From positions 62,001-126,000 of the IMG/VR virus record IMGVR_UViG_3300042540_001399: a stretch of DNA of 64,000 nucleotides. One strand, given 5' to 3'. Each line of letters starts with the position of its first letter. The first letter of the stretch is position 1. Under the pieces are notes generated by a model. It had not been told where the DNA came from. It searched no databases and was given only the letters and a program-made list of their open reading frames with translations. The translations under genes and the position numbers were made by a program. Positions 12,726-42,210 of the stretch are shown here, piece after piece.

Positions 12726-15484
12726 GTTGTGGTTCAATAAATATATTCAATTATTCAATTACGGGAGACTGTGAAAACACAGGATCTGGAGGTGTATCCT
12801 TTTCAATAAATGGGGGATCTCCAAACTATACAGTAACTGAATATTCATCAACAGGATTATTACCTACATCGGCAGATACCACATCATATTTTTTTGTAGG
12901 TCTTACCGCAGGAACGTATGTTATTGAAATAGTTGACAGTTGTTTAGAAGAACCACTTATTTCACAATTTGTAGAATTCACTATTTCTTCGGGAAGTTGT
13001 ATTTCTATCCAAAGTCAGGGAACAACGTGTGGACTAAACAATGGTTCTATAACGGCATCGACAACTAATATATATGGAACAGGATATTATTATTTATATG
13101 AAATTAATGATGGATACATAACAAGTGGTACCAACTTTAGTAATATTTTTAATAACCTGACACCTGGTTTTTATTATGTTATTGGAGATGATGGTGGTGG
13201 ATGTACCGGTCGTAGTGAAACTTGTCTAATAAAAGAAACAAACTCGTTGGACTTTGGTTTATATATCGTAAATGATGCTAGTTGTGTGCCAATAGATGGA
13301 ACCGGAAAAATATTTGTAACAGGTACAACAGGAACTCCACCTTATACATACAATTGGACACCGAATGTTGGACCCCAAACAGGTCCAATTGTTACTGGTC
13401 TTACCGCAGGAACCTATTCTGTAACAGTAACCGATAATTTGGGATGCTCAAAAACACAAAGTGTTTTGTTGACAGATGTGCCAAATTTAGGTATTGCCGC
13501 TATGTTAACAACAAGTCAACCATCTTGTTTTTCAAATGACGGAGTGGTTGATGTTATTGTTTCTGGTGGAACAGCACCTTATTATTTTTCAGGATCAAAC
13601 GGAGAAGTTGTTATACAATATAGTAATACATATACCTTTACGGGACTATCAAATGGTGTCTTCACAATTTCAGTCACAGACGCGGGTCTTTGTAATGTAA
13701 CATCATCAGTTTCCTTGATTACACCAAATGGTTTCATTGTAACATCTATGGTTGTTACAAATTCGAATTGTAATCAAACCGATGGCTCAGTTCATATTGA
13801 ACTCAATAATGGTCTGGCTCCAGGTAACTATCAGTACACACTCTATGATTATAATAGTAATCAAACAGTTATAACCACAACTTCTATTTGTGATTTTACC
13901 GGATTAGAAAGTGGAAGCTATACAATAACAATACAAGATGTACCCAACAATTCAGGATGTATTTATACAGGTTATTTTTCTGTTGTAAATCAAAATAAGT
14001 TCGAAATAAGTGTAAGTAATACTGACACAACTTGTGGATTGAATAATGGTGTTGCAATTATTACCGCAACCACAGGAGGAACATTACCTCTAAACTATAC
14101 ATTGTCGGGTGGTACACCTGTTACGACTACAACACAATTAACGAACGTATTTAACAATCTAAGTCCTGGTTTTTATCAAATAACAGTAACAGATTCTGCG
14201 GTACCATCATGTTCACAAACTGAATTATTTTATGTTGCTCCGTCACAGAACGTTAATATAAATTTAATTGGTGTCCCACCAGTAATAGGTAATGATGGTG
14301 AAATATTCCTTAATATTACAAGTGGTAATCCTCCATTTACAATTACGTGGAGTCCAAATGTTGGATCACAAACAGGACTACATTTAACAGGTTTGTCAAA
14401 TGGTAGTTATAGTGTTTTGGTTACAGATAGTGACGGATGTATTTCATCGGACATAATATCATTACAAGGCACTGAATTAGTTACAACTTACGCGTCTTTT
14501 AATTTGTGTACCGATGATTTCATAGACACAAAAACATATGGAAAAAGAGGAGTTCTTCAAATGATGAACGAAGGATTTTTCGATCTTACAACAGGTGATA
14601 CTGGTTGTGAAATAGTAGAAGCCTACTTTACAACCCAAGTCGAAATTGATGGTGTTGTAAAAGAAGATTTATTTTTAACTTACACGGGAACACCTTTTCC
14701 ACAATACGCAGACATTTTATGGATAGAAAGTCTTAGAACCACACTTAAAGAATTTGACGAAGTAGGAGATGTGATTATTGATTTGGCAACAAATAAAATA
14801 ACTATAACAAACAAATGTAACACAAAAATAAAGGACTGTGATATTGTAACTTTTAACGACTTTAGTGATACTAATGTCAAAATAAATTTGTTGGTTGAAT
14901 ATCTAATAAATTGTCAAACTTGTGGTAAAGCGCCTGATTGTATAGGATTCTATGCTGATATGTCAATTGTAAGTGGTGATTGTAGTGGTTTCAGTGCAAA
15001 TATGAATTTAGTGGGACCAACACCAACACCGTCAGTAACACCAACACCAACAATTACTCCTACACCTACAATCACACCTACAGTAACTCCGACAATTACA
15101 CCAACACCTACTATACCAGCAACTGGTTGTACCTGTTTCATATTAGAATCAAACGCCGATCTGGCGATTTTTGAATATACTAAATGTGGGGAGTCTACAC
15201 CAAGTACAATTCCTATTTTGTTTGGTACGGGATACACTTGTTCATCAACTACCCCTATTTTAATTAGTGGTATGGGATCGGTATTGGGTTCATCGGGTTC
15301 ATGTATAGTTTATGAATGGGAAATCACCTTTAGCGGTGGTGGATCATACACTACATATAATTGTGGTTCATCAAATGAAACTTCCGTTTTAAGTGGAGGT
15401 ACTTTCACGGTTTGTTCGACTATAACACCAACAAGTTCATCACCAAATTTTGTGTCAGCAGTAAATATTGGAATATGTCCTTAA
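12713..15484 (+). CDS. Fibre/adhesin-like protein with multiple SprB-like repeats and a Pro-Thr linker (923 aa; start may be 12722)
   Basis: Repeated C...(N/D)G.I.....GGT.PY.Y.W......GL.AG.Y.V.VTD..GC units (e.g. GTTGTPPYTYNWT...GLTAGTYSVTVTDNLGC). PT tract near the C-terminus. Confidence 0.7.
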   Translation: MYSMSCGSINIFNYSITGDCENTGSGGVSFSINGGSPNYTVTEYSSTGLLPTSADTTSYFFVGLTAGTYVIEIVDSCLEEPLISQFVEFTISSGSCISIQSQGTTCGLNNGSITASTTNIYGTGYYYLYEINDGYITSGTNFSNIFNNLTPGFYYVIGDDGGGCTGRSETCLIKETNSLDFGLYIVNDASCVPIDGTGKIFVTGTTGTPPYTYNWTPNVGPQTGPIVTGLTAGTYSVTVTDNLGCSKTQSVLLTDVPNLGIAAMLTTSQPSCFSNDGVVDVIVSGGTAPYYFSGSNGEVVIQYSNTYTFTGLSNGVFTISVTDAGLCNVTSSVSLITPNGFIVTSMVVTNSNCNQTDGSVHIELNNGLAPGNYQYTLYDYNSNQTVITTTSICDFTGLESGSYTITIQDVPNNSGCIYTGYFSVVNQNKFEISVSNTDTTCGLNNGVAIITATTGGTLPLNYTLSGGTPVTTTTQLTNVFNNLSPGFYQITVTDSAVPSCSQTELFYVAPSQNVNINLIGVPPVIGNDGEIFLNITSGNPPFTITWSPNVGSQTGLHLTGLSNGSYSVLVTDSDGCISSDIISLQGTELVTTYASFNLCTDDFIDTKTYGKRGVLQMMNEGFFDLTTGDTGCEIVEAYFTTQVEIDGVVKEDLFLTYTGTPFPQYADILWIESLRTTLKEFDEVGDVIIDLATNKITITNKCNTKIKDCDIVTFNDFSDTNVKINLLVEYLINCQTCGKAPDCIGFYADMSIVSGDCSGFSANMNLVGPTPTPSVTPTPTITPTPTITPTVTPTITPTPTIPATGCTCFILESNADLAIFEYTKCGESTPSTIPILFGTGYTCSSTTPILISGMGSVLGSSGSCIVYEWEITFSGGGSYTTYNCGSSNETSVLSGGTFTVCSTITPTSSSPNFVSAVNIGICP
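15017..15118 (+). repeat. Pro-Thr low-complexity coding repeat
   Basis: PTPTPSVTPTPTITPTPTITPTVTPTITPTPTIP, encoded by ccaaca-type repeats. Confidence 0.9.
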
Positions 15485-15513
15485 ATAAAATAAAAATATA
15501 ATATATATAGAAT

Positions 15514-17694
15514 ATGGCACTTCAAGTAACAATTACAAATATAAATTCAGTAACATACCCTGTTGATGTATATGTTTGTACAGATTGTCCAGATACAAGT
15601 TGTACTTTAGTTGACACAATTTTTTCTGTACCATCAACAATAAACATACCCGCACCCTATAGCGGTTCATCTTCTTTTTCTGTTAGAATTGTAGATAGTG
15701 CCAATTGTGAATATTGTCAAACTTTTGGAAATACAACAACAACTACAACAACCATAAATCCATTGTGTTTAAGTTGTGATATTGGTTTTGATTTTTACGA
15801 TACTAACCCAATATCCGAAATTTCAGTTGGAGAAGTTACAGGAAGTTGTGATACAAATATTACTGATTACGTTATAAATTGGTATGGACCGGGTATTGGA
15901 AGTAGTACAGTTGCGTTTACTTCGGGTATAGGTAATTCATATAGTGGTGACTATACATATACACATCCGCTTACAGGATCATCGTCAGTTCCTGTTGTTG
16001 CAGGAGTCTACACACCAATAATACAAAAAATCAAATTGAATGGTATTGAGTACACGGACTTAAATTGTTTCCAATCAACTACAGTTGATGTTGATGCATT
16101 AACATGTATTAATGGACCTGGAACTAATTTGCCACAATATTCCCATTTGTTAAGTTTTAGTGCTGTTACAAATTTGAATCCACCACCGGTAAATGTGACT
16201 TACGCATTGGATCCTTTGAAACCATATTTTGCAATTAGATTCGATACTGAATTAGTTTATGACAGTTTGAAAATTACATTGAATGCTGCGGCATATACAG
16301 ACCCAATTATTTTAGAATATTTTACCGCGGGTCAGTCTTTAGGTGGATCAGATCTTAATTTAAATACAACACCAAAAAAATTCCAACATTCCTTTAGTCT
16401 ACCATTTGTGGCGAAAGTACTTACACTAACAGGGTTTACAATAAATACTGGTGATTATATTGATATAGAAGTTACCCCCAACCCAACAAACAATAACACA
16501 AATTGGAAACTTTATTGTGAATGTTTAGAAAATTTTGATTGTTCTTTGTGTGACGACACAAATAACACAACACCATTTAAAATAATTGAATCTTCTATAA
16601 CCCAAGGTGCTGCCAGCCCATGTGACATTATAAGTATGACTTTCCAAGTAAGTGCTTGTACATCAAGTGATTTTTTAAGATATATGTTAAATACTGGTGG
16701 TACTTTTTCTAATATTAATTATATTGATAATTTTTACCAAGGTATAGTGACCCAATATTTCACAAATATGAGCTCCACACCTCAGATTCAGTGTGTAAAT
16801 GGTGGGTACTACTTAACGCCACAATGTGATACACCAAGCAATTCTACAATTACTTATAGCAAAAATGTACCAGGAGCCGAAGGACAGATAACCATGACCT
16901 TCACTGATTTTACAGATTTTCAAGTATATAATAATGGATGGAATAACTTACTTTTTAGTTATTCGGGGAATCCTACAGATTGTACCGATATTGAATACTA
17001 CAGATATTTTTGGTTAACAATCCCACTAGCAAGTGGAAATGATAATTGTGGTGACACTACAGGTTACGAAACTTATTTTATTCACCCATCATCAACATTC
17101 ACAACTGGTGGAACAGGTCCATGGACAATAACAATTGATATGGCTACCATAACTGACTGTATTACATTTACTAGTTGTGATCTAAATTGTAATACTGAAG
17201 TTTTGACAACTTTAAGTAATGTAAATAATTCATCAACAGGAACAACTAATAATATTTCAATAACTTCAAACACAGGATCAAGATTAGTAACTCCGTGGCA
17301 TTCCGTAACACTTATAGATTCAGGGTCAACCACTTTTTCATCAAGTACAGTTACAAACCAAATGTGGATACCAAAATATATTAATGAAACAGTACCTTAC
17401 TCTGGAAATCCTCTCACCATAATTCCTAATCTTTCAGGGAAGACATGCGATTTCAATAATTGGACATATAATTCTGCAAATCCATCAATTAACAACGGTT
17501 TTTATGTGCAATTCGGGTTTTGGTACGAAGTTAGAAGGACAAACCCATTGAATGTTGCGGATTTCGAAATATGGACAACAAATTTAACAAATGGAACATA
17601 TACTGGTTATCCTGGTCAACCTACCGCATTATTTAAAATATATGAATTTGTAGGTGGGGTTCCTAATGTGATTGATCCAAACTTTTTTGTTTAA
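15514..17694 (+). CDS. Cys/Thr-rich fibre-like structural protein (726 aa)
   Basis: N-terminal ~70 aa domain shared with ORFs at 17696 and 28234, followed by a poly-Thr linker. Structural context. Confidence 0.55.
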   Translation: MALQVTITNINSVTYPVDVYVCTDCPDTSCTLVDTIFSVPSTINIPAPYSGSSSFSVRIVDSANCEYCQTFGNTTTTTTTINPLCLSCDIGFDFYDTNPISEISVGEVTGSCDTNITDYVINWYGPGIGSSTVAFTSGIGNSYSGDYTYTHPLTGSSSVPVVAGVYTPIIQKIKLNGIEYTDLNCFQSTTVDVDALTCINGPGTNLPQYSHLLSFSAVTNLNPPPVNVTYALDPLKPYFAIRFDTELVYDSLKITLNAAAYTDPIILEYFTAGQSLGGSDLNLNTTPKKFQHSFSLPFVAKVLTLTGFTINTGDYIDIEVTPNPTNNNTNWKLYCECLENFDCSLCDDTNNTTPFKIIESSITQGAASPCDIISMTFQVSACTSSDFLRYMLNTGGTFSNINYIDNFYQGIVTQYFTNMSSTPQIQCVNGGYYLTPQCDTPSNSTITYSKNVPGAEGQITMTFTDFTDFQVYNNGWNNLLFSYSGNPTDCTDIEYYRYFWLTIPLASGNDNCGDTTGYETYFIHPSSTFTTGGTGPWTITIDMATITDCITFTSCDLNCNTEVLTTLSNVNNSSTGTTNNISITSNTGSRLVTPWHSVTLIDSGSTTFSSSTVTNQMWIPKYINETVPYSGNPLTIIPNLSGKTCDFNNWTYNSANPSINNGFYVQFGFWYEVRRTNPLNVADFEIWTTNLTNGTYTGYPGQPTALFKIYEFVGGVPNVIDPNFFV

Positions 17695-17695
17695 T

Positions 17696-18004
17696 ATGGG
17701 ACAAATTCAAATTACTAGCACAAGTTTTACATCATTACCATATAATGTTTATGTTTGTGATGTTTATGGAAATCAATGTGTTTTAGTTGCAAATATTGTT
17801 ACATCACAACCACCAACAATAGTAATTAATGTTCCTATACAATTTAACAACGCACCCGCAATTGGAATAAAGATAATTGATTCTTTGGGATGTGAAATTT
17901 TTAAAATTTTAGATTGTTCACCTGATGGCTTTAATCAAAAACAATTTCAGGATGGGTATTTCTTTTATTTTATGGATAATGATTCTTACGATTTCCAAAA
18001 CTAA
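17696..18004 (+). CDS. Small structural protein, paralogue of the ~70 aa Cys domain (likely start 17696)
   Basis: MGQIQITST...PYNVYVCD...CVLV...IKIIDSLGCE aligns with the N-terminus of 15514 and with 28019..28234. The ATG follows the previous stop directly. Confidence 0.6.
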   Translation: MGQIQITSTSFTSLPYNVYVCDVYGNQCVLVANIVTSQPPTIVINVPIQFNNAPAIGIKIIDSLGCEIFKILDCSPDGFNQKQFQDGYFFYFMDNDSYDFQN

Positions 18005-18027: not shown

Positions 18028-19494
18028 ATGTCATTTTTAACAGATAGAAATTTTGCTTCAGGTGTTTCGGTTAATGATTTAATTCACATTGTTATAACAG
18101 GTGATACATCACAAAATCCTGCCGGATCATCATATAAAACTACTTTGGGTGATGTAATTTCTTTAGTGACAGGAATTACAGGAAATTATTTACCAATAAG
18201 TGGTGGTACAGTTACGGGCACAACTTTCTTTATCAGTGGTTTATCGGCCAACACTTTTTCGGCATCAACTATTGGTTCATCAGGTAGTTGTGTAGACGAT
18301 TTGTATGTTTCGAATATACATTCATGTTCGCCTTTGAATATAAATCCATTTGACGAAGGTGAAGTTCTGTTTGGGTCCAATAAACAAATTTTTGTTGACT
18401 TAGTTGGTAAAAAAGTTGGATTCAATATGACCCCAACATATAATATTGATGCGATGGGAACTACTAATGGTAGATTTTTCTTTAGAGGTGCGTCCCTTCC
18501 AAGTATAAACATTTCTGGTACAAGTAACTCCTACGTATCCACAAACACTGTGGCAGGAAATGTTGGGTTATTGTCTGTTGCTTTTGGGGAATCATACCCA
18601 TCTAACCTTTATGGTGTTGTATCGGGAAATACTTTACTAACAAACACAAATGAATCAAATGATATGGTTATTTTAACCAATCAAAGTTCAACTAATGATA
18701 AAAATATAAAGTTTTTTGCTGGAAAATCTGCGGATACAAAACCTGATATTATTATTTTGGGTTCAGGATCAGGATTAAAAAGAGGGTATGTTGGTGTTGG
18801 ATTAAATAATCCCCAGGAACACTTACATGTTGATGGAAATTCTATAATCAACCAAGGATTAACCGCGGCAACATTTAATATTTCAACAGCACCTAATATA
18901 GATACAAATGTACCTACAGAATATCTAACAAGAGATGCTTCGACCGGTGAAGTTAAAATCAAACAAATTCCAGGACCAACCGTTTTCGGTTTATTTGCAC
19001 AAACAGGAAACAGTGTGGTTATCAGCGGTACCACAGTTGAATCTACTTTAATTGATGGAGGTGTTGGAACTTTATCTGTTCCGGCAAATGGTTTTTCTAT
19101 TGGGGATAGTTTTAGAGCGGACTTTGGTGGTTTAATGAGTGTAAAACCTGGTGGTGATACTTTAAGAATTAGAATAAAAACTGGTAGTGTTATTTTAGGT
19201 GATACTGGAGTTTTAAGTATACCGGCAGTAACAAACGATGTTTGGCTTTTAAATATAAATTTTACGGTAAGAAAACTTGGGGGACCAACGTTTGCTTCAA
19301 TTGTAAGTTTAGGAAATCTACATGTAATAAAAGCCGCAAGTACAACACCAACAAGTTTTGCCTTTAACACTGTTAACTCATCAACTTTTGATACAACAAT
19401 ATCAAATACACTTGACGTTACCGCCGAATGGGGAAGCAATAGTACTAATAACAAAATATATTCTGATATTTTTGTTCTAAATAAAATATATTAA
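18028..19494 (+). CDS. Tail fibre protein (488 aa)
   Basis: YLPISGGTVTG and GYVGVGLNNPQEHLHVDGN are typical fibre shaft motifs (YLPLSGGTLTG; GNVGIGT..P...LHV.G). Confidence 0.65.
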   Translation: MSFLTDRNFASGVSVNDLIHIVITGDTSQNPAGSSYKTTLGDVISLVTGITGNYLPISGGTVTGTTFFISGLSANTFSASTIGSSGSCVDDLYVSNIHSCSPLNINPFDEGEVLFGSNKQIFVDLVGKKVGFNMTPTYNIDAMGTTNGRFFFRGASLPSINISGTSNSYVSTNTVAGNVGLLSVAFGESYPSNLYGVVSGNTLLTNTNESNDMVILTNQSSTNDKNIKFFAGKSADTKPDIIILGSGSGLKRGYVGVGLNNPQEHLHVDGNSIINQGLTAATFNISTAPNIDTNVPTEYLTRDASTGEVKIKQIPGPTVFGLFAQTGNSVVISGTTVESTLIDGGVGTLSVPANGFSIGDSFRADFGGLMSVKPGGDTLRIRIKTGSVILGDTGVLSIPAVTNDVWLLNINFTVRKLGGPTFASIVSLGNLHVIKAASTTPTSFAFNTVNSSTFDTTISNTLDVTAEWGSNSTNNKIYSDIFVLNKIY

Positions 19495-19529: not shown

Positions 19530-20507
19530 ATGAAAGATATTGTATTTGTTACGGCACAACCAGACGTTCCTTATTTCCATTGGCAAGTTAAATTATATAC
19601 CCACAATTTTATAAAAAAAGGCATCAATCCAAATAACATACATGTAATATTTGCAATGGTTCATGGTGCAAAAAAACCAACTGATGAAGCTTTAAAAATA
19701 AAAGATTATGGTGTTAATGTTCATTTTTATGAAGATAATAGAGATATTAAAACATATATACCAAGCATAAAACCTTATATGATCACACAGTGGTTAAAAG
19801 AGTTTCCCGAACATGGTAAATTGTTTTTTTTACATGATGCGGATATAATATTTAACTACCTACCAAATTTCGAAGAACTTTTAAAAGACGAACTTACTTA
19901 TGTATCTGACACAATTGGGTATATAGGTTATAACTATATTATGGATTGTTGTAATAGATATGAAACAAAACATCCAAATTCACAAAAAGGACAGTTACTA
20001 CAAGAAATGGTTAATATTGTAGGTGTAACAGTAGATTGTGTAAAATGTAATCAAGAAAATTCTGGTGGTGGTCAATATCTAATTAAAAACACTGATCATA
20101 ATTTATGGCAAAAAATATATGACGATTGTTCTCCATTATATTATCAGATGTTAGATTATCAAAAAAGATTTCCCATAAGTCCAGGTGAAATTCAATTTTG
20201 GACGGCAGAAATGTGGTCATTACTTTGGAATCTATGGTTAAACGGTAACGAAACCAAAATAACTAAAGAGCTTAATTTTTCATGGGCAACTGACACCATA
20301 GGAGTTTTCGAAAAAAATCCAATACTACATATGGCAGGTGTAACCGAAAATCTAAAAGGTACTAAGTTTTACAAAGGAGAATACATTAATATTGACCCAA
20401 TCCAAAAATTAAAATCTAACCCAAACCATTTTGATTACATAGATAAAAACAGCTCAACAATCAAGTATGTTGAAGTAATGAAATCTTTCATTCAAAATGA
20501 CTTATAA
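19530..20507 (+). CDS. GT-A glycosyltransferase resembling plant peptidyl-Ser galactosyltransferase / Hyp arabinosyltransferase (GT96/GT95-like)
   Basis: Ordered motifs YFHWQ, YIPSIKP...QWL, FFLHDADIIF (DxD), GGGQY, WTAEMW mirror recalled SGT1 motifs YFDWQ, YPAINKP...YWL, ILDADMII, VGG, WISEMY. No signal peptide. Confidence 0.7.
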   Translation: MKDIVFVTAQPDVPYFHWQVKLYTHNFIKKGINPNNIHVIFAMVHGAKKPTDEALKIKDYGVNVHFYEDNRDIKTYIPSIKPYMITQWLKEFPEHGKLFFLHDADIIFNYLPNFEELLKDELTYVSDTIGYIGYNYIMDCCNRYETKHPNSQKGQLLQEMVNIVGVTVDCVKCNQENSGGGQYLIKNTDHNLWQKIYDDCSPLYYQMLDYQKRFPISPGEIQFWTAEMWSLLWNLWLNGNETKITKELNFSWATDTIGVFEKNPILHMAGVTENLKGTKFYKGEYINIDPIQKLKSNPNHFDYIDKNSSTIKYVEVMKSFIQNDL

Positions 20508-20531: not shown

Positions 20532-21584
20532 GTGGGACAAACAGATAGACCTAAACCAGTACTTGCACCCAGGAATGAATGTGATGTTATTACAATTTTT
20601 CCTATGGGGGCAAAATGTTTTACAAAAGAACCAACTAATGTAACAACATTTGATGGTGCGGTTTCGGTTGGTATTACAGGGGGAACACCACCATATACTA
20701 TAGCTTGGGAAAATGGTAATGTTGCGCCGGCAATAACAAATTTAGGTGTCGGTGAATATAACGTAACAATTACAGATTCCTACGGTGATTTTGTTATAAA
20801 CCAAAAATGTGTTCTCAACGCCACACCACTTCCAACTCCAACTCCAACTCCAACACCGACCATAACTCCAACACCGACCATAACTCCAACACCTTCTGTA
20901 ACACCAACATCAACTCCTATACCAACATTGACACCATCGGCAACACCAGAACCTTTAATTTGTTTTACCACTGAATATGAATTTTTAGGTCCGATTTATA
21001 CATCAATGTCATCAACAGGACAATATAATGGAAGACCATACTACGAACTAATAGGTCTTGGTGGAAGTGCTTTTGTTTGGTGGAATTCCGGATTGTCAAG
21101 ATGGGAAATGACATTATTCTTAGGTGGTGGTCTACTTTTGGCATATTTACCAAGTACTAATTCTTTTCCTGTTGACCAAACAGTTGATTGGGTAAATGTA
21201 AGAACTGTTTATATGTTAACATCATATGGGCTTTGTAGTTATCCACCAACAGAAATGTGTTTTGAAGTTTTAAAGAATGACCCACCAACAACACTGATAT
21301 GTAATGGATATATTGTTGGTACTTATAATAATAAGTTTTATTTTGCAATATACAGTCCTGTAACGTCACCACCAACATTAATTGGGTATGTATTTTGGGA
21401 TGATGTTGACAACAGATGGGAATGTTGGCAAACTTTTAACCCATCTACAGGCCCCACAGGAAGTTTTTATGCTTATTTATCAAATAACGCTAATTACCCA
21501 AATAGTACAATTTCTCAAAACTGGGTTTCAAACCCACTTGTGACATATGGAATAAACAGTTCTTCACTAGGGACTTGTCAGTAA
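20532..21584 (+). CDS. Fibre-like protein: SprB-like repeat, Pro-Thr linker, two tandem aromatic modules (GTG start)
   Basis: GITGGTPPYTIAW...NLGVGEYNVTITDSYG. PT tract at 20823-20954. Duplicated YN(G/N)+..Y...W....RWE module. Confidence 0.65.
   Translation: MGQTDRPKPVLAPRNECDVITIFPMGAKCFTKEPTNVTTFDGAVSVGITGGTPPYTIAWENGNVAPAITNLGVGEYNVTITDSYGDFVINQKCVLNATPLPTPTPTPTPTITPTPTITPTPSVTPTSTPIPTLTPSATPEPLICFTTEYEFLGPIYTSMSSTGQYNGRPYYELIGLGGSAFVWWNSGLSRWEMTLFLGGGLLLAYLPSTNSFPVDQTVDWVNVRTVYMLTSYGLCSYPPTEMCFEVLKNDPPTTLICNGYIVGTYNNKFYFAIYSPVTSPPTLIGYVFWDDVDNRWECWQTFNPSTGPTGSFYAYLSNNANYPNSTISQNWVSNPLVTYGINSSSLGTCQ
20823..20954 (+). repeat. Pro-Thr low-complexity coding repeat
   Basis: [44 protein letters not shown]. 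Confidence 0.9.
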
Positions 21585-21597
21585 AATACTAATTTAA

Positions 21598-22593
21598 ATG
21601 AATTTGTGTGTAGTTACAGAAGTTTTAGAAAATAGGGAAAGAAAAATAGAAACCTATAATTTTATTGAATCCGAAATGTTGAACGGTAAAAGTTCTTGGG
21701 TTTTTGAAGAACAATATTTTTTATATTGGTCTACTGGTACAACAAATCAGTGGATTTTAAGTGGGTTTCCAAATACTTTTATTTATACATTTTCGAATAC
21801 AGAAATACCTTTCACTAATTGGCAAATTTTAGGATCAAGACCCCCAAAACAAATAACAAACTTAAGAATAACAACTGGTGAGTGTGAAAATAATGTCGTG
21901 GTAGATTATAATGTTAATATTAAAAACAGTTCTTGTAAATGTGATGGTATTATATCAATAGATCCATTTAGCGGAACAGAACCATTTACATATTATCTAA
22001 ACGGTCAAATACAGACAGGAAACATAATTCAAAATTTATGTAGTGGTAGATATGTTATTACGGTTGAAGACGTAAACGGAAACACAACAATTAAAGAAGT
22101 AGTAATACCACAAAATGATGTTACCCAATATTTTGTCACGTTGAATTTTGATAAAACAACGGGATATTTTAATATTTTTTGTAACCCAAGTTTAAACAAT
22201 AACATTCAGTTAAGTTTAGATTTAGTGTATCAAAACACACTCAAATATAAACCTAATTTTGGTGATGTAAGTCAAAATACAAATGAACAAATTATTTTAA
22301 ATGGAAATGACATAGGACAGTATACTACCAAAATTGATAATACACAGTCTACGCCACTTTTGAGACCCTGTGTTGGTAATAATTACAATAACGTTACAAC
22401 TAAAGAATGGAAAAATTTAATTATTGGTAATGGTGATACTTTGGAAGGTTACATTAGTAGTGATTTAATCTATAATGTAGATTTGAAAACACCTTGTTTA
22501 AGTGCATCACAGGATCTTGTACTTAATTTGAATAATCTTAGATTAATAAATTGTGAATGTTGTAATGTTACAAAAGTTATTATTAACAAATAA
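21598..22593 (+). CDS. Fibre-associated protein with one SprB-like repeat (331 aa)
   Basis: CKCDGIISIDPFSGTEPFTYYL...NLCSGRYVITVEDVNG. Confidence 0.55.
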   Translation: MNLCVVTEVLENRERKIETYNFIESEMLNGKSSWVFEEQYFLYWSTGTTNQWILSGFPNTFIYTFSNTEIPFTNWQILGSRPPKQITNLRITTGECENNVVVDYNVNIKNSSCKCDGIISIDPFSGTEPFTYYLNGQIQTGNIIQNLCSGRYVITVEDVNGNTTIKEVVIPQNDVTQYFVTLNFDKTTGYFNIFCNPSLNNNIQLSLDLVYQNTLKYKPNFGDVSQNTNEQIILNGNDIGQYTTKIDNTQSTPLLRPCVGNNYNNVTTKEWKNLIIGNGDTLEGYISSDLIYNVDLKTPCLSASQDLVLNLNNLRLINCECCNVTKVIINK

Positions 22594-22621
22594 AAAAAGT
22601 TATTTAATATTTATTATTTAA

Positions 22622-25210
22622 ATGGCATATATAATTAAAAATACATCGGGATTGGTTAACACAAGAGTTACCGATACAGGTAGACAAAAGTTATCACAAG
22701 GTAACTTCAAAGTTGCCTATTTCCAAATTGGGGATAGTGAAATATCATACGATAAATTACCTTCTAATTATAACTTTACAAATTCCTTTGTTTTAGAACC
22801 AGCATTTAATACTCAAAATTCTGCAGGTGTTCCAGAGTCAAATAGACAAAGCATTAAATATCCATACTATGTTGATGGAACTAGTGGATCTACTTATGGA
22901 ATACCTTACATGGATTCTACGATAGATCCTGTTTATAATAGGGCACCACTAAGAGGGTTTTTTACAGGAAACACAACCGCAAGTACAGTCGTTTGGAGTG
23001 CATTAACTAACAATCAATACGTGGTTTCTTCAAACTATATTATTGATATGTCAACTCTAAATGGTACTAATAAAGTTGATTTAATTTATTCTGGATGTAA
23101 TTATACAAATACAAACAAACCATCTATTGGGGATTTAATTACAATATATTATGATGGTTTTGGTGAGTATGACTGTAATTGTGTTAATTTACCAACACCG
23201 ACTCCTACACCTACACCGTCAATCACACCAACCGAAACTATCACACCAACTCCAACACCAAGTATCACACCTAATTATAACCCTTGTGCATCGCCAACCC
23301 CAACACCAACTCCAACAAGGACACCGTGTTTAACACCTACTCCGAGTAGACTTTGTCCTCCACCACCGCCACCAAGTTGTGTTATGTCTATGAATTCATG
23401 TTATCAAATTCTGACATATAGAATAATTGATATATGTGAAAATACTATAACACTTGATAGAAACACACCCGATTTTTGTGGTACAGTAATAACACATTGT
23501 TACGCACGTACATTGATCTATCCGCCAAATATGACTTCTATTTATGATAGTATAACTCCAAGTCCACATTGGGGCGAACAAGTAATCGATTTTGAATCTA
23601 TTTGTGATACAGATCAATTTGATGTGAAAATATGGAACATGAATATTCCATGGACCGAAAATCCCGCTGGTATGATACCTACAAAATATGAAGGATATCA
23701 ATATTTTGGTTCAGTTGATTATATAGGATCAAAAGAATACTTTGGATACAATTCAAATTCAGGACAAACATTTTTTATCAATAATACTTTGAGTGCTGAG
23801 ACTACAGATACTTTTTATTACAATTCTTTAGGTGAAATCGTCAAAGTACAACCCGAAGAACAAAAGGCAATTGCCATCATACATTATACTAATCAAACAA
23901 TTGATTTCTTTTATGGTGAAAAATTTGCACTGGAACCGTATGATCCAAGCAACTTAGACGATACAACAGGACAGGCTAGAAATTTTAGACTTCATATACC
24001 TTGGTTGATGTGGCATAAGAATCCTGAATGTTGTTTTGGTCAAACTTTTTGGGTTGATCCTCCAGGATTTGAAGGTAAAAATCTTTTTGATGTTAGATAT
24101 GTTCAGACAACTAGAAATGATGATATGAATAATCCCGGTATTAGATATTATCATTTGTGGGATACTAATAAAAACAAAAACGGTTTACCTAATCGAATTG
24201 GTAAAGTTTTCCCTGATAGTAAATTAATTATTATTGACGATGAAGAAATAATTGCCGCGATGTCTTATAAGGCAAATAGAAATTGGACTTTGCCGGCACC
24301 TCAATTATCGCTTATAACCCCAAATACTTGTGGATTAGCGTCTTTAACTGCTGATGGGGTTTTGACAGGTCATGGTGAAACTATGTATGTCACTTATAGG
24401 TTTACAAATAAAACTTGTAGTACAAATTCACTTCATTGCAATTACTATGTAAAACTTGTTGGGAATAATAATGATTGTACGCCTAATGTTTCACAAAATG
24501 TTGCCATTAGATTTGGTCGCGAATTTAATTGTTTGGATTATATGATACCAACAACAACGACGACAACGATACCAATATTTACTACTACAACTACAATTCC
24601 ATTCACAACTACAACAACAACAGATCCTTTTCCATTAACAACGACTACAACTTTTTGGCCGTACACCACAAGTACAACAACAATATGCCCACCTTCTTGT
24701 AATATAAATAAAGGTTTCTTTGCTGAATCATTCCAAGTTTTATGTCAGAAAGTGAAAACAGGACAAAGACCGGATCCATCAAGTTGGAAAATAATTGATT
24801 ACACACAAGACTTAGGTAATTTAGTAACACAAGATACTTTGACAAACAATACTTTTGTTATAACGAAAGATCTTTACGATAAGGCTCCATATTACGACTT
24901 GGGTAGTTATATAAACTTGACTAAATTAGGAAATGACAAACCTGATTTAAATTTTGGTGACGAATATTATTTTTACGGTTCCTTTGAATCAGATATAATG
25001 GCAACCATATATCAGATGAAATATAAGATAAATTTAAATTTTACAGAATTTCAAAATTCAACTAACCCAACATGGAAACAAGGAACAAAATCATTCGTAA
25101 CCGAAATTGCATTATTGGATGAGGATAAAGACATTCTTGTAATGTCAAAGTTACAATCACCTGTGTTAAGACAAGGAATACAACAGTATTTAGTCAAACT
25201 TGACTTTTAA
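22622..25210 (+). CDS. Tail/baseplate-fibre junction-like protein with PT, poly-Pro and poly-Thr linkers (862 aa)
   Basis: N-terminal [25 protein letters not shown] and C-terminal [18 protein letters not shown] resemble the two ends of tail-collar fibre (DUF3751-like) domains. Confidence 0.55.
23192..23374 (+). repeat. Pro-Thr and poly-Pro coding repeat
   Basis: [27 protein letters not shown]...[11 protein letters not shown]...CPPPPPPSC. Confidence 0.9.
24548..24690 (+). repeat. Poly-Thr mucin-like coding repeat
   Basis: [48 protein letters not shown]. Confidence 0.9.
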
Positions 25211-25258
25211 CCTTTAATTTTTTTTCATTTAAATTATTTTATAACTAAAACCAACTTT

Positions 25259-25858
25259 ATGGCTAAAATCAAAAATTCACCAAAAGTCTTAGGATTAGAT
25301 ATATCTACTAAAACAATTGGTTGGGCTTTGTTCGATATACAAAGTCAACAACTTTTAGAACTAACACACGTTTCCCCAAGACCAAAAATGAAAGAAGATG
25401 AAAAATTAAAAGAGTTACTTTTAAAATGTGAAATCTTTAGAGAAAAATTGATACAATACAAAAATTTAGGAATTGTCAGTGTGGTAATTGAAGAACCACT
25501 TCTTAATTCGAATAATATCTATACAATCCAAACCCTGTTAAGATTTAATAGTTTTATTTTCAAAGAAATATATGAAATATTAAATGTTGTACCTGAATTT
25601 ATATCAACATATAATTCCCGTAAATTTGCTTTTCCTGAATTAGTCCAAGAAAATGAAAAGAAAAAATTTGTTTTGTTTGGAGGTCTACCAAAAGATATTG
25701 ATAAGAAAATGATTATATGGGAAAAAGTTGCTAAAAGAGAACCACAAATAAAATGGTTATACACAAGAAATAATACACTTAAAAAAGAAAATTTTGACCA
25801 AACAGATGCATATACCTGTGTTTTAGGATATATGAGATCTAAAGAAATTTGGAAATGA
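25259..25858 (+). CDS. RuvC-like Holliday junction resolvase
   Basis: VLGLDISTKTIGWA, VVIEEP, DQTDAY give the RNase H-fold D, E, D/D catalytic set. Confidence 0.8.
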   Translation: MAKIKNSPKVLGLDISTKTIGWALFDIQSQQLLELTHVSPRPKMKEDEKLKELLLKCEIFREKLIQYKNLGIVSVVIEEPLLNSNNIYTIQTLLRFNSFIFKEIYEILNVVPEFISTYNSRKFAFPELVQENEKKKFVLFGGLPKDIDKKMIIWEKVAKREPQIKWLYTRNNTLKKENFDQTDAYTCVLGYMRSKEIWK

Positions 25859-25913: not shown

Positions 25914-25929
25914 ATTCAAAAAAAATTAT

Positions 25930-25937
25930 TATATTTG
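25930..25937 (+). promoter_or_regulatory. Bacteroidota-type -7 element (TATATTTG)
   Basis: TAnnTTTG 24 nt before the ATG at 25962, right after a terminator. No clear -33 TTTG. Confidence 0.55.
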
Positions 25938-25961
25938 TAAAATAAACAAATAAAAATAACT

Positions 25962-26378
25962 ATGAAAATCTTATCTTTGGTTTTTTCACTATTATTAACT
26001 TTTAATTTTTTTTCTCAACAAGTCGTAATTCAAGTAGATGAAGTTCAGTCATACTTTGGTGATACTACATCAACCATGACAGAAATATTTGAAAAAAAAT
26101 ATAACTTGGAACCACAACATAAAAATTGTAGGTATATAATCGATTTTACAAATAATAAAGCAAGTTTTTTTAGAGATGGGGAACTTATTGATCACGGATC
26201 TATAAAAGTAGGGCATGAAAACGAATATACAGTTGTTGAGTTTCTTAACGACGGATTTAATTATGGACTAATTTTAAATTTAGATATCCATAATGAATTG
26301 GTAGTTCTTTATCAAATAGATAATGATAAGGTTGAGTATATGAATTTCACTAGATTTCAGATTCTTAAACCAATGTAG
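25962..26378 (+). CDS. Secreted hypothetical protein (signal peptide followed by Gln)
   Basis: [20 protein letters not shown] is a Sec signal with predicted +1 Gln. Confidence 0.6.
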   Translation: MKILSLVFSLLLTFNFFSQQVVIQVDEVQSYFGDTTSTMTEIFEKKYNLEPQHKNCRYIIDFTNNKASFFRDGELIDHGSIKVGHENEYTVVEFLNDGFNYGLILNLDIHNELVVLYQIDNDKVEYMNFTRFQILKPM

Positions 26379-26400
26379 AAATATTTTTTTTTATAATACT

Positions 26401-28017
26401 TTAGTGAATTGAATCTGAACAAAGATCTATAATAGTTCCACCGGCCATAGAAGCCCCATTACCCGAAATTGTTATTGTGGTATATGGTACATCGTTTGAA
26501 AAGGTGAATATTCCCGATCCAATATCACCGTATGGTGCATTTTGTGGACAAGGTATTGCGGAAATTACGTTCCCATTAATTTTTGCACAACAACTACTAC
26601 AAGTACTTATCACTGGATTACCTGTATTTGTTGTGATTATAAATTCTTCGTAAACAGTTGATGAAATGTAATTGTAATTTATGAATCTAAGCGTTACATT
26701 ATTAACAGGACTATCAAAAGTTAGAGTGTAAGTAAATGGGTTGTTTCCTGGTAAAATATCATTACCCAAATATAAAAAGTTGTCTTCTACATTTGGACCC
26801 GAAATACACCAACCTAAAAATCCACCAAAAGTTCCCGCTTCTATTTTTCCAGTACCACTACCTGTAATATTAACACCGTTAACAACTATTGAATTACCAA
26901 CTTGAGGTAATGTTACAACTTGTGAACATTCAAAACAACCAGGTGGTGTTGTAGGTGTGGGAGTTGGTGTTGCTGTAGGCGTTGGTGTAGGTGTTTGGGA
27001 AGGACTTGGGATACAATCTAAACATTTACCTTCATTTTCAGGACCTAATTCTGAAATTAATTCTATTTGATCTACACCACTTATGTTATCAACCAAACCT
27101 ATGAAGGTTGCACAAATTGATTCGTTGTTTATTATAGTTTTATAAACATATCCTTCTAAAGGAATTTCACCATTTATTAACAATAATTCGGTTGAGTAAT
27201 ATTCTATACCTGTGAAACAATCTCTGAATTTCTTACTACTTGAACATCTAATGTAATCATCAATCACATTAAATGTTACTTGACCAGAAACCAAACAATT
27301 TATTGTAGGTGTTGGTGTTGGACTTGGAGTTTCACTTGGAGTTGGAGTTGGTGTTGGTGTGAATGTTATTCCTGTTGCTTGAAAACTCAAACTATTACAA
27401 ACATTTGATGGTGTCGGTGTAGGTGTCGGTGTAGGTGTCGGTGTTTTTGTCGGGGTGACAGTAGGTGTTGGTGTAATGTCACAATTAAAATATGCTTCAA
27501 AATCTATTAGCTCACAACTTGGAAAAGTTGTTGATGTAGTTATGACACAGTATCCTTCAGAAAAAAATGAATCACATAAATCAGGACAATCACTTGTACA
27601 TGGACTTTTACCAAATAGTAAACACGGCTCATCAAGGTCGTTAGCCAAACACCAACAATTCTCATCAGAACTATAGTATATTACAAAATCACCAGTCCCA
27701 CCTGTGTAATAAGGAAGTCCATTATATGTTCCATTCGAAGTGTAGTTACCATCGTACAACGATGTCCCTGAAATACAATACTGATTTGAACACGGACAAT
27801 CATCAATGGAATCAATCCCCGATATTTGTTTATATTCTAAAACTATTGACCCATTTGAATAGTACCCGTTTGTTGCTTCTGAAGTACAGATTGAATCGAA
27901 ATATAAAATTGTACCAAGATTCAAATCATTCCCATACAATGGTATAATCAAAGGTTCTGAACATAATTCAGGGTCAATAGTTGAGTTTGAAAAATATCCT
28001 AAAAAAATACAAGCCAT
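26401..28017 (-). CDS. Cys-rich fibre-like protein with three Pro-Thr linkers (538 aa)
   Basis: Three PT tracts separate Cys-rich modules. Contains the GTYNGLPYY...W module shared with 20532. Confidence 0.65.
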
Positions 28018-42207: not shown

Positions 42208-42210
42208 AAA

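What the first reader, a model, noticed from the sequence alone, without database searches (positions are those of the whole stretch)
15017..27478. Mucin/extensin-like Pro-Thr and poly-Thr linkers recur in five virion genes
Seen: tracts at 15017-15118, about 15730-15755 (T7), 20823-20954, 23192-23374 (ending CPPPPPPSC), 24548-24690, and three in the minus-strand gene (about 26940-27478). They separate Cys-rich or beta-rich modules and I saw no comparable tract in the non-structural half of the window. Established: PT linkers act as extended, usually glycosylated spacers in cellulases and adhesins. Inference: these are modular, flexible fibre or whisker proteins whose linker length may vary quickly by slippage on ccaaca repeats, tuning reach through capsule or biofilm.
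Basis: partly seen in the sequence, partly recalled or inferred. Interest (0 to 1): 0.6.

Follow-up and report, generated by a model that had tools for sequence, protein, structure and literature searches.

The report
Variable Pro-Thr linkers in phage tail proteins
Five genes in the baseplate/fibre region of a 274-kb lake-water phage carry Pro-Thr or poly-Thr spacer tracts that join or decorate folded modules, change length by repeat slippage between almost identical phages, and lie in a genome that also encodes glycosyltransferases of the kind that start mucin-type sugar coats; that last link is untested.

Summary
The window belongs to a 274-kb jumbo myovirus from lake-water metagenomes, probably infecting Bacteroidota. 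The five genes directly follow a gp6-like baseplate wedge gene. The phage's tail sheath, outside the window, carries the same kind of tract.

Comparison with 80 related viral contigs and 120 homologous proteins shows that the flanking domains keep their length while the tracts vary (56-263 and 6-92 residues in the 862-aa protein). Whole small modules are inserted in the tracts or appended after them. Three natural variants that are 99.5% identical in DNA differ by three indels. All three lie in linker DNA, and each is one unit of a short tandem run, which is the signature of slippage. The window's own genotype kept its linker lengths in metagenome runs dated 2016-2024.

New here: a conserved GT8-like glycosyltransferase lies inside the fibre module (19530-20507), and elsewhere the genome encodes a PF11397 (GT60-type polypeptide GlcNAc-transferase) enzyme. 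Glycosylation is therefore plausible but unproven. Virion membership rests on context only, and the 862-aa protein remains unidentified. I rate this a new member of a known kind, of moderate interest.

The parts
12713..15484 (+). Gene A, 923 aa. An array of SprB-type Ig-like repeats (conserved residues 1-737), then a PT linker, then a Cys-rich C-terminal appendage (803-923).
   Evidence: Pfam SprB PF13573, E 2e-15, 56 bits against a cut-off of 28. Hoc-like phrog_2973, E 4e-9. In relatives the protein ends at about 715-745 aa or continues through 1-11 PT tracts to as much as 1223 aa.
15017..15118 (+). PT linker of gene A (34 residues).
   Evidence: It marks the start of the optional C-terminal appendage.
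15514..17694 (+). Gene B, 726 aa. A roughly 70-aa N-terminal 'YxVYVCD' domain, a T7 spacer, then a large variable body.
   Evidence: The N-terminal domain is paralogous to window 17672-18004 and to genome ORF 42067-42537 (hmmsearch E 4e-33 to 3e-40). Homologues appear in only 7 of 80 related loci, so the gene is hypervariable.
15733..15753 (+). T7 spacer of gene B.
   Evidence: It lies directly after the 70-aa N-terminal domain. It is present in the L045 orthologue and absent in L073.
17672..18004 (+). 110-aa protein made of the same small N-terminal domain alone.
   Evidence: In relatives this domain is fused to PT-rich proteins of up to 890 aa with 8 tracts.
18028..19494 (+). 488-aa fibre-like protein with a conserved N-terminal stretch of about 50 residues and a variable remainder. 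It has no P/T tract.
   Evidence: Orthologues share 61-68% identity over residues 1-50 only and range from 105 to 1166 aa. No Pfam or PHROG family matched. 'Fibre-like' is my inference from this pattern.
19530..20507 (+). GT-A fold, GT8-like glycosyltransferase with a DxD motif (H102-D103-A-D105), inside the fibre module.
   Evidence: AlphaFold2 pLDDT 94.4. Foldseek against PDB: WbbM, UGGT catalytic domain, glycogenin, LgtC and XXYLT1, probability 1.0, E about 2e-6, TM about 0.45. BFVD: viral GT8 proteins. D103 and D105 are invariant in 36 orthologues. The gene is present in 71 of 80 related loci. phrog_4417, E 2e-68.
20532..21584 (+). Gene E, 350 aa. An N-terminal SprB-like domain (about residues 1-96), a PT linker, then a C-terminal domain.
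   Evidence: SprB at E 1e-5, which is below the Pfam cut-off (25 against 28 bits). In relatives only the N-terminal roughly 95 residues are conserved, and the gene is often fused with the next gene into one protein of 446-763 aa.
20820..20954 (+). PT linker of gene E (45 residues). It contains the cleanest DNA repeats: a hexamer x4 and an 18-mer x2.7.
21598..22593 (+). 331-aa protein. It is the C-terminal part of the E-F fusion proteins of most relatives.
   Evidence: it aligns to the C-terminal roughly 320 residues of the same ORFs that carry the E-like N-terminus.
22622..25210 (+). Gene G, 862 aa. A core protein of the lineage with unknown role. It has three length-invariant parts (1-185, 256-638, 693-862) separated by two P/T tracts.
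   Evidence: 363 relatives in IMG/VR and more than 2300 in metagenomes. Domain lengths are 184-186, 370-384 and 170-177 aa. No Pfam, PDB or named Atlas relative. The whole-protein model is poor, pLDDT 47.
23186..23374 (+). PT tract 1 of G, with conserved Cys residues (C187, C222, C236, C245, C253, C260) and CPPPPPPSC at its end.
   Evidence: It is 56-263 aa in 80 orthologues and 59-315 aa in 120 homologues, some with inserted acidic or Cys-rich modules.
24545..24690 (+). Poly-Thr tract 2 of G: five units of about 9 residues, [YF]xP[IVL]TTTTT.
   Evidence: There are 0-5 units, 6-92 aa, among orthologues. A one-codon (ACA) slippage was seen between 99.5% identical variants.
26401..28017 (-). Gene H, 538 aa, on the opposite strand. 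Cys-rich N-terminus, two PT tracts, a middle domain, a PT tract, then a C-terminal beta-rich domain.
   Evidence: Only the core (residues about 75-336) is conserved. Relatives are 317-1173 aa with up to 14 tracts, and in some the gene sits elsewhere on the + strand.
27403..27477 (-). PT tract 1 of H (25 residues), with a perfect 12-mer x2.9.
27301..27369 (-). PT tract 2 of H (23 residues).
26935..27003 (-). PT tract 3 of H (23 residues).

Best explanation
The tracts are extended, non-globular Pro/Thr spacers in modular proteins of the baseplate/fibre module of a freshwater jumbo myovirus that probably infects Bacteroidota.

In A, E and H, and in a 156-aa paralogue elsewhere in the genome, the tracts tether optional or exchangeable distal modules to a conserved core or anchor domain. 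In G and in the tail sheath they are variable excursions at fixed positions of an otherwise length-invariant protein.

Their length evolves much faster than the rest of the protein, in two ways. One is replication slippage on short codon repeats, which adds or removes one PT or one T at a time. The other is insertion of whole small modules into the tract.

The tracts are most likely O-glycosylated on Thr in the host cytoplasm by phage-encoded enzymes. That would make stiff, protease-resistant, hydrated stalks or a brush on the tail.

Shown: position, non-random occurrence, modularity, length variation and the slippage signature. Inferred: virion location, extended conformation and glycosylation. 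The confidence given is for the spacer/joint core of the statement; for the glycosylation step alone I would say about 0.4.
For: 1. Tracts are real and far above chance.

2. Context:
- A gp6-like baseplate wedge gene (phrog_219, E 5e-19) lies immediately upstream of the window.
- The tail sheath (phrog_23, E 1e-58; tblastn to annotated sheaths) has a P/T tract at a position conserved in four lineages. Its composition drifts between poly-T, PT and poly-P.
- Gene A has SprB/Hoc-like Ig repeats.
- A 3394-aa collagen-repeat protein lies in the same genome block.

3. Modularity. The cores of A, E and H are conserved, and appendages begin at the tracts. A 156-aa protein consists of an anchor domain, a PT tract and a Cys-rich module.

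4. Length variation. G's domains are 184-186, 370-384 and 170-177 aa, against linkers of 56-263 and 6-92 aa. 55% of pairs at least 99.5% identical differ in linker length and 0% have domain indels. Three indels, all single repeat units and all in linker DNA, separate variants that differ by 14 substitutions in 2604 nt.

5. Glycosylation candidates:
- A GT8-like GT-A enzyme with an invariant DxD lies inside the fibre module and is conserved in 71 of 80 loci.
- A PF11397 enzyme (E 5e-70) lies at genome 42586-43833. It has no N-terminal hydrophobic segment and has a D-S-H motif. It is present in 5 of 5 related jumbo phage records and in 0 of 14 control genomes. It is flanked by two small P/T-tract proteins.
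- GT60 enzymes start mucin-type O-GlcNAc on Thr in protists (PMC8724618, PMC9472816, PMC6939170).
- Two further glycosyltransferase-like genes are present.

6. The poorly modelled stretches of G coincide with the tracts (pLDDT below 50 at 188-251 and 641-692).
Against: - No direct evidence that any of the five proteins is in the virion. G has no identifiable relative of known role. H is transcribed in the opposite direction and moves between relatives.
- One further tract-bearing protein, outside the window, carries a T9SS CHU_C signal. It is probably exported by the host rather than built into the virion, so such tracts are not exclusive to virion proteins.
- The window genotype showed no length change in contigs from four lake metagenome runs dated 2016-2024, so the tracts are not hypermutable on that scale.
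- Perfect DNA repeats are short.
- Glycosylation is inferred only. The glycosyltransferases could act on DNA or on host glycans. A thymidylate-synthase-family gene is present. The GT8-like gene is kept even where the neighbouring E orthologue has no tract by my criterion.
- That PF11397 corresponds to the Gnt1/GT60 family is from my memory of Pfam, not from a tool.
Confidence: 0.65

Rival explanations
1. The tracts are plain, unmodified spacers. Pro-rich sequence alone gives an extended segment. The phage glycosyltransferases serve other targets: DNA modification against restriction, or remodelling of host surface glycans.
For: - Everything about position, modularity and length variation is explained equally well without sugars.
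- A thymidylate-synthase-family gene is present (E 2e-90). Some members of that family make hydroxymethyl-pyrimidines that phages then glycosylate (established knowledge).
- The paper on a similar lineage lists DNA glucosylation and serotype conversion as the usual roles of phage glycosyltransferases (PMC12619734).
- In sheath orthologues the tract can be almost pure Pro or Pro with Ala/Val. That argues that Thr is not essential at that site.
Against: - The founding and characterised members of GT60 are polypeptide transferases, not DNA or lipid transferases (PMC6939170, PMC9472816).
- One glycosyltransferase is embedded in the fibre module and conserved there.
- Poly-Thr runs (T5-T7, repeated) have no obvious advantage over Pro-rich sequence as bare spacers.
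- The thymidylate-synthase match is very strong, as expected for an ordinary ThyA.
Confidence: 0.35
2. The main role of the tracts is at the DNA level. Similar PT-coding sequence in many fibre genes provides microhomology for recombination, so modules can be shuffled between genes and phages. The protein linker is a tolerated by-product.
For: - Modules are gained, lost or inserted exactly at the tracts.
- The PT DNA of gene E matches the tracts of A, H and a fourth gene at 76-83% over 36-62 nt.
- PT-coding DNA from many other contigs piles up on these tracts in lake metagenomes (depth peaks, joints and loose ends at 23200-23399, 26800-26999 and 27200-27399).
Against: - Identity between tracts is low and the stretches are short.
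- Codons are scrambled synonymously, which reduces homology.
- The tract positions in G and the sheath are conserved where no module is exchanged. That points to a role for the peptide itself.
- This rival complements the best explanation rather than excluding it.
Confidence: 0.2
3. Some or all of the five proteins are not virion parts. Instead they are made in the infected cell and act on or at the host surface, for example as exported adhesins or superinfection-exclusion proteins. This is most likely for H.
For: - H is on the opposite strand, next to a small protein with a signal-peptide-like N-terminus (25962-26378), and changes position in relatives.
- The genome encodes a SprB+PKD+CHU_C (T9SS-signal) protein with a PT tract, which shows that the phage also makes host-type secreted proteins with such linkers.
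Against: - A, B, E and G lie in one co-oriented block that starts right after a baseplate wedge gene.
- None of the five has an N-terminal signal peptide by reading or a CHU_C domain.
- The sheath, a certain virion protein, has the same kind of tract.
Confidence: 0.12

Closest known systems
Pro-Thr linkers of bacterial cellulases and xylanases (for example Cellulomonas fimi CenA and Cex) and O-glycosylated Ser/Thr/Pro linkers of fungal cellulases (from established knowledge, not tested here)
   Same: Low-complexity (PT)n tracts of 20-60 residues between independently folding modules. Length and sequence vary while the modules are conserved. They act as extended spacers and are glycosylated in the native host.
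   Different: Here the tracts are in cytoplasmically assembled phage tail, baseplate or fibre proteins, not in secreted enzymes. Any sugar would have to be added by phage-encoded cytoplasmic enzymes. Poly-Thr repeat units and Cys-punctuated PT tracts are also present.
Mucin-type O-glycosylation started by polypeptide HexNAc-transferases (GT27 in animals; GT60 in Dictyostelium and Trypanosoma cruzi) (PMC8724618, PMC9472816, PMC6939170)
   Same: Thr- and Pro-rich acceptor tracts occur together with a PF11397/GT60-type enzyme in one genome. The enzyme has a D-x-H motif.
   Different: No glycan has been shown. The known enzymes are eukaryotic, Golgi or cytoplasmic. The best-known cytoplasmic member (Gnt1) modifies hydroxyproline, and this phage has no detectable prolyl hydroxylase.
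Virion glycosylation of mycobacteriophages (Freeman et al. 2023, as cited in PMC12619734)
   Same: Phage-encoded glycosyltransferases would modify the phage's own structural proteins.
   Different: In those phages the glycans sit at the C-termini of the capsid and tail-tube subunits, not on PT or poly-T linkers of baseplate or fibre proteins. The enzymes are of other families and the host phylum is different.
BclA collagen-like glycoprotein of the Bacillus anthracis exosporium nap (from memory, not tested here)
   Same: A repeat tract containing Thr is O-glycosylated. Its repeat number varies between strains and sets filament length, which is the 'length tunes reach' idea.
   Different: BclA has a GXY collagen triple helix, not PT or poly-T. 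It is bacterial, not viral.
T4 Hoc and other Ig-like decoration domains on phages
   Same: Gene A and a distant paralogue hit the Hoc-like PHROG and SprB/PKD Ig-like repeats. These are surface-exposed arrays that bind weakly to glycans.
   Different: Hoc has no PT linker and decorates the capsid. Gene A lies in the baseplate/fibre block.
'Moraphages', freshwater jumbo phages predicted to infect Flavobacteriia (PMC12619734)
   Same: Aquatic and mostly freshwater. Genomes of up to 307 kb. Bacteroidota hosts predicted. Four core glycosyltransferase orthogroups.
   Different: Membership was not tested here, and this genome has no DnaK. The paper's main text contains no 'threonine' or 'proline', and its only 'linker' refers to a linker histone.

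Membership tests
PT-type interdomain linker (cellulase-like) | Low-complexity tract dominated by Pro and Thr, 10 or more residues | tested here: met
   Eight tracts of 10-63 residues with at least 80% P/T. Shuffles give 25 residues against 391 observed in the genome.
PT-type interdomain linker (cellulase-like) | Lies between independently folding modules | tested here: met
   For A, E and H, orthologues exist with and without the modules beyond the tract. For G this is inconclusive: a weak model puts both flanks of each tract in one compact domain.
PT-type interdomain linker (cellulase-like) | Length and sequence vary while the flanks are conserved | tested here: met
PT-type interdomain linker (cellulase-like) | Extended, flexible conformation | not testable with these tools
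   The only hint is pLDDT below 50 across the tracts in a poor model.
Mucin-type O-glycosylation system (GT60 enzyme plus Thr-rich acceptor) | Genome encodes a GT60/PF11397 polypeptide GlcNAc-transferase homologue | tested here: met
   Genome 42586-43833: PF11397, E 5e-70, 237 bits against a cut-off of 21. Present in 5 of 5 related phage records. The link between PF11397 and GT60/Gnt1 is from memory.
Mucin-type O-glycosylation system (GT60 enzyme plus Thr-rich acceptor) | Metal-binding DxH/DxD motif intact | tested here: inconclusive
   The sequence reads ...LQIDSHMRF.... I did not align it to a characterised enzyme.
Mucin-type O-glycosylation system (GT60 enzyme plus Thr-rich acceptor) | Enzyme and acceptor are in the same compartment | tested here: inconclusive
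   No N-terminal hydrophobic segment in the enzyme by reading. Phage structural proteins are cytoplasmic (established knowledge). No predictor was run.
Mucin-type O-glycosylation system (GT60 enzyme plus Thr-rich acceptor) | HexNAc O-linked to Thr of the tract | not testable with these tools
   Needs glycoproteomics.
GT8-like retaining GT-A glycosyltransferases (for window 19530-20507) | GT-A Rossmann-like fold resembling GT8 members | tested here: met
   pLDDT 94.4. Foldseek probability 1.0 to WbbM, UGGT, glycogenin, LgtC and XXYLT1 and to viral GT8 proteins. TM is only about 0.45, so the family-level assignment is approximate.
GT8-like retaining GT-A glycosyltransferases (for window 19530-20507) | DxD motif | tested here: met
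   D103 and D105 are invariant in 36 orthologues.
GT8-like retaining GT-A glycosyltransferases (for window 19530-20507) | Donor and acceptor specificity | not testable with these tools
   Needs an enzyme assay.
Extensin-type hydroxyproline glycoproteins | Prolyl 4-hydroxylase available | tested here: not met
   No PF13640 or PF03171 match in the 274-kb genome at E 0.01 or better. A host enzyme cannot be excluded.
Extensin-type hydroxyproline glycoproteins | Repeated Ser-Pro(3-5) motifs | tested here: not met
   Only one CPPPPPPSC, in G. The tracts are PT or poly-T.
Phase-variable contingency locus (simple-sequence repeat switch) | Long perfect repeat whose slippage shifts the frame or switches expression | tested here: not met
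   Perfect repeats have at most 4 copies. Observed indels are 3 or 6 nt and preserve the frame. No length change in contigs from four metagenome runs.
SprB repeat (PF13573) proteins | Match above the Pfam gathering score | tested here: met
   Gene A: 56.4 bits against 28. Gene E: 25.2 bits, below the cut-off, so not met for E.

The most novel reading that the evidence does not exclude
An abundant lineage of freshwater jumbo phages builds a mucin-like coat on its tail, baseplate and fibre proteins. A phage-encoded cytoplasmic GT60-type polypeptide GlcNAc-transferase would start O-glycans on the Thr of PT and poly-T tracts, and the GT8-like enzyme in the fibre module and other phage glycosyltransferases would extend them. 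Slippage would then tune the length, and so the sugar load, of each stalk. This would be mucin-type glycosylation in a bacterial virus, made with an enzyme family so far characterised only in eukaryotes.
Probability: 0.3. Interest if true: 0.75.

Novelty: new member of a known kind. Interest (0 to 1): 0.48.

Why it matters
Pro/Thr linkers are an ordinary device, so the tracts themselves are not surprising. What the data add:

- This lineage has more than 2300 homologues of one gene in metagenomes. In it, the tracts are the sites where tail and fibre proteins change: single-repeat slippage over short divergence and insertion of whole modules over longer divergence. That gives a concrete map of where host-range-relevant proteins of an uncultured phage group are plastic.
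- The lineage pairs these Thr-rich tracts with a conserved GT60-type enzyme and with a glycosyltransferase embedded in the fibre module. This makes testable whether glycosylation of phage virions, so far shown in mycobacteriophages, extends to Bacteroidota phages and to mucin-type chemistry.

If the glycosylation is confirmed, it would bear on phage stability in lake water, on adsorption through host capsules, and on recognition by host defences.

Tried and rejected
- Megablast of 12.5 kb and tblastn of G against 50,697 GenBank phage records gave no match, so no cultured relative is available for proteomic inference. The sheath finds only distant T4-like and uncultured relatives.
- The whole-protein AlphaFold2 model of G was poor (pLDDT 47).
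- A VIA-align wide search on that model gave Z of at most 7.1, which the tool's own notes place at noise level. Many top rows are phage tail or capsid proteins, but I do not count that as evidence.
- A profile search of G against PDB sequences found nothing. The ESM Atlas returned only viral 'hypothetical' clusters. PDB sequence searches of H, the 156-aa protein and both glycosyltransferases found nothing useful.
- I tried to define the recurrent Cys-rich module (CxC-x17-C-x17-C-x17-20-C). It is seen in the C-terminus of A, in the 156-aa protein and in inserts in G orthologues. Iterated phmmer/hmmsearch found no further members. A regular expression was non-specific, with 118 hits against 58 in shuffled sequence. 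I dropped this as a claim.
- Extensin-type chemistry is rejected: no 2OG-Fe(II) oxygenase or prolyl hydroxylase was found.
- No DnaK was found, so this marker cannot tie the genome to the DnaK-bearing 'moraphages'.
- Read laying had only assembled contigs, so rare length variants within a sample could not be seen.
- The large representative search was not run. PHROGs and Pfam had already left G without a named relative, that library carries no names, and the main claims do not depend on G's identity.

Full report
**What the window is.** The window is bases 88638-152637 of a 274,138-bp IMG/VR virus record, estimated 93% complete, with about 30% G+C. Lake-water metagenomes hold the stretch at up to 100% of sampled words. 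The genome encodes:
- a T4-type tail sheath (phrog_23, E 1e-58; tblastn to hundreds of annotated sheaths);
- a gp6-like baseplate wedge protein at genome 86388-88229, immediately upstream of the window;
- a family-B DNA polymerase, a DnaB-type helicase, ribonucleotide reductase and a UvsX-like recombinase;
- in the window, a RuvC-like resolvase, a primase and an exonuclease after gene G.

It also encodes a protein with SprB, PKD and a CHU_C type IX secretion signal. This points to a Bacteroidota host, because type IX secretion is confined to that phylum (established knowledge). No cultured phage is close. A 2025 paper describes freshwater jumbo 'moraphages' with predicted Flavobacteriia hosts and four core glycosyltransferase orthogroups (PMC12619734). 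This genome may be of that lineage or a neighbouring one. I did not test this, and it lacks DnaK.

**The observation.** All eight tracts exist at the stated coordinates, in genes A (12713-15484), B (15514-17694), E (20532-21584), G (22622-25210) and H (26401-28017, minus strand).
- With a fixed criterion (10-residue windows, at least 80% P/T), the whole genome has 11 tract-bearing genes and 391 tract residues. Within-protein shuffles give means of 1.5 genes and 25 residues.
- In the window, 5 of 16 genes before 28017 carry a tract against 0 of 47 after it (p 6e-4). Genome-wide, 10 of 59 genes in the block 22-117 kb carry one against 1 of 244 outside (p 4e-7).
- The block is not purely structural, however. 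Replication genes are interleaved in it.

**The tracts as joints.** I recovered 80 related loci with 10-kb flanks and found the orthologue of each gene in them.
- Gene A keeps residues 1-737, the SprB/Hoc-like Ig array. It then either ends at about 715-745 aa or continues through 1-11 PT tracts to up to 1223 aa.
- Gene E keeps only its N-terminal roughly 95 residues. In most relatives it is fused through a PT tract to the homologue of the next gene (21598-22593).
- Gene H keeps a core (residues about 75-336). It gains N- and C-terminal modules through up to 14 tracts and sometimes sits elsewhere in the locus.
- Gene B was found in only 7 loci.
- The 488-aa protein at 18028-19494 keeps only its first roughly 50 residues. 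I read this as the pattern of a fibre with a conserved anchor (my inference).

B's first 70 residues form a small domain. That domain also exists alone (17672-18004) and in a 156-aa protein at genome 42067-42537 built as domain, PT tract, Cys-rich module. The T7 of B is the spacer directly after that domain.

**Gene G.** G is a core gene of the lineage, with 363 IMG/VR contigs and more than 2300 metagenomic proteins.
- Across 80 orthologues its three parts are 184-186, 370-384 and 170-177 residues, while tract 1 is 56-263 and tract 2 is 6-92 residues. A set of 120 database homologues gives the same picture.
- Tract 2 is 0-5 copies of a roughly 9-residue unit, [YF]xP[IVL]TTTTT.
- Tract 1 has a variable PT part and a conserved Cys-punctuated part (C222, C236, C245, C253, C260).
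- Some orthologues carry whole inserts inside either tract. These are a Cys-bracketed acidic motif of about 25 residues, or Cys-rich modules of about 55 residues.
- G has no Pfam, PHROG (other than a low-complexity hit), PDB or named Atlas relative.
- The AlphaFold2 model of the whole protein is poor (pLDDT 47). The tracts are among its least confident stretches.
- A structure search on the model stays at noise level (Z at most 7.1). The alignments do need residues from both sides of each tract (model ranges 133-312 and 556-757, with the tracts trimmed out). This suggests that in G the tracts may be loop excursions from a compact domain rather than tethers. I treat this as a lead only.

**Speed and mechanism of length change.**
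- Among G homologue pairs at least 99.5% identical over the 738 domain residues, 55% differ in linker length and none has an indel in a domain.
- I fetched the DNA of three such variants from three different assemblies. They differ by 14 substitutions in 2604 columns and by three indels.
- All three indels are in linker DNA, and each is one unit of a short tandem run: (CAACAC)3 against 2, one CCTACR hexamer, and (ACA)5 against 4.
- Two limits apply. First, perfect repeats in the window's own tracts are short: hexamers of at most 4 copies, an 18-mer x2.7 and a 12-mer x2.9, with synonymous codons mixed throughout. Second, contigs from four lake metagenome runs dated 2016, 2017, 2020 and 2024 span G's two tracts and H's three without a single gap.
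- The tracts are therefore indel hotspots, not phase-variable switches, and all changes seen preserve the frame.
- Depth peaks, joints and loose ends at the tracts come from other PT-coding DNA in the lakes laid at 90% likeness, not from variants of this phage.

**A certain virion protein with the same feature.** The tail sheath (genome 58088-61411) has a P/T tract at residues 283-318. In three other lineages the tract is at the same position, flanked by the same conserved Cys. Its composition runs from poly-Thr to PT to almost pure Pro. This shows that such tracts are tolerated in assembled tail proteins of this lineage. It also shows that, at that site, an extended P/T-type segment matters more than its exact sequence.

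**Glycosylation candidates.** The 325-aa gene at 19530-20507 lies between the fibre-like gene and gene E.
- It folds with pLDDT 94.4 into a GT-A glycosyltransferase.
- The fold is closest to GT8-type retaining enzymes (WbbM, UGGT catalytic domain, glycogenin, LgtC, XXYLT1; Foldseek probability 1.0, E about 2e-6, TM about 0.45) and to viral GT8 proteins.
- Its DxD motif is invariant, and the gene is present in 71 of 80 loci.

Outside the window, genome 42586-43833 matches Pfam PF11397 'Glycosyltransferase (GlcNAc)' at E 5e-70.
- The protein has no N-terminal hydrophobic segment and has a D-S-H motif.
- It is present in all five related jumbo phage records tested and in none of 14 control genomes.
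- It has more than 7300 metagenomic homologues at 73-99% identity.
- It is flanked by two small proteins with P/T tracts, and there is an HtrL_YibB-family gene nearby. A fourth glycosyltransferase lies at genome 18041-19255.

From memory, PF11397 was built around Gnt1. Gnt1 belongs to CAZy GT60 together with the T. cruzi and Dictyostelium polypeptide alpha-GlcNAc-transferases that start mucin-type glycans on Thr (PMC6939170, PMC8724618, PMC9472816).

No prolyl hydroxylase-like oxygenase is encoded. If sugars are added, Thr is therefore the likelier acceptor, and the 'extensin-like' reading is not supported.

None of this shows that the tracts are glycosylated. The enzymes could act on DNA or on host glycans, and a thymidylate-synthase-family gene is present. 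In the searchable literature I found GT60 mentioned for phages only as an item in a list of auxiliary genes. I found no paper linking P/T tracts of phage tail proteins to glycosyltransferases.

**Verdict.**
Modularity, rapid length variation and slippage are shown. Virion membership is likely for A, B, E and G from context and open for H. Glycosylation is plausible and now has named candidate enzymes, but it is inferred. 'Reach through capsule or biofilm' is untested.
- The tracts are a new member of a known kind, Pro/Thr linkers.
- The most novel reading not excluded is a mucin-type glycan coat on a bacterial virus.

Noticed in passing
G000 genome 25825-36009 (outside the window; L085:3825-14009): A 3394-aa protein made largely of collagen triple-helix repeats (PF01391, 1164 bits). 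It lies next to two PT-tract genes (22143-25019, with a papain-like peptidase C-terminus, and 25021-25809). It is probably a giant fibre.
   Followed up: partly
G000 genome 227010-229529 (outside the window; L090:1010-3529): An 839-aa protein with SprB repeats, PKD domains and a CHU_C type IX secretion signal, plus a short PT tract. It is a host-type secreted surface protein carried by the phage and a marker for a Bacteroidota host.
   Followed up: partly
G000 genome 42067-47011 (outside the window; L086:3067-8011): A cluster made of a 156-aa protein (anchor domain, PT tract, Cys-rich module), a PF11397 GlcNAc-transferase, a 334-aa unknown, an HtrL_YibB-family protein and a 155-aa protein ending in T6. 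It may be a glycosylation cassette together with its own substrates.
   Followed up: partly
window 23186-23374; sheath residues 283-318; genome 25021-25809: Cys residues punctuate the PT tracts at conserved positions, often as (N/D/S)PC. G tract 1 has six. They could form disulfides within or between chains once the particle is outside the cell, like an antibody hinge. This is not tested.
   Followed up: no
G orthologues in L014, L022, L031, L026, L038, L046 (inside tract 1 or tract 2): A Cys-bracketed acidic motif of about 25 residues (CxI[LM]TE...L.TE[DN]..[DN][FL]L[IV]W.DC) is inserted in either tract in several lineages but not in the window's own gene. It looks like a portable docking or metal-binding peptide.
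   Followed up: no
window 14805-15484 (A residues 803-923); genome 42343-42537; inserts in L044, L057, L035: A recurrent Cys-rich module of about 55-60 residues with spacing CxC-x17-C-x17-C-x17-20-C follows or interrupts PT tracts. I could not define it statistically, and it has no Pfam or PDB match.
   Followed up: partly
window 25962-26378: A 138-aa protein with a signal-peptide-like N-terminus ([20 protein letters not shown]) lies between the RuvC-like gene and gene H. It was found only in the four loci that are 100% identical in G.
   Followed up: no
window 20532-22593: Genes E and the following 331-aa gene are separate here and in the closest relatives, but form one fused protein of 446-763 aa in most other lineages. 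This is a gene split or fusion at a PT tract.
   Followed up: partly
window 23200-23399, 26800-26999, 27200-27399: In four lake metagenome runs, summed contig depth rises several-fold exactly over the PT tracts, with many joints and loose ends. PT-coding DNA of at least 90% likeness is therefore common in many other genomes of these lakes.
   Followed up: no
G000 genome 175199-176296 (L099): A thymidylate-synthase-family protein of 381 aa (PF00303, E 2e-90). It is longer than a usual ThyA. Whether it is a plain ThyA or a pyrimidine hydroxymethylase bears on the DNA-glycosylation rival.
   Followed up: no
IMG/VR records behind L006 and L011 (G001, G002): Two records of 290.9 and 290.7 kb, estimated 99% and 97% complete, carry a G gene 100% identical to the window's. 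They look like fuller copies of the same phage.
   Followed up: no
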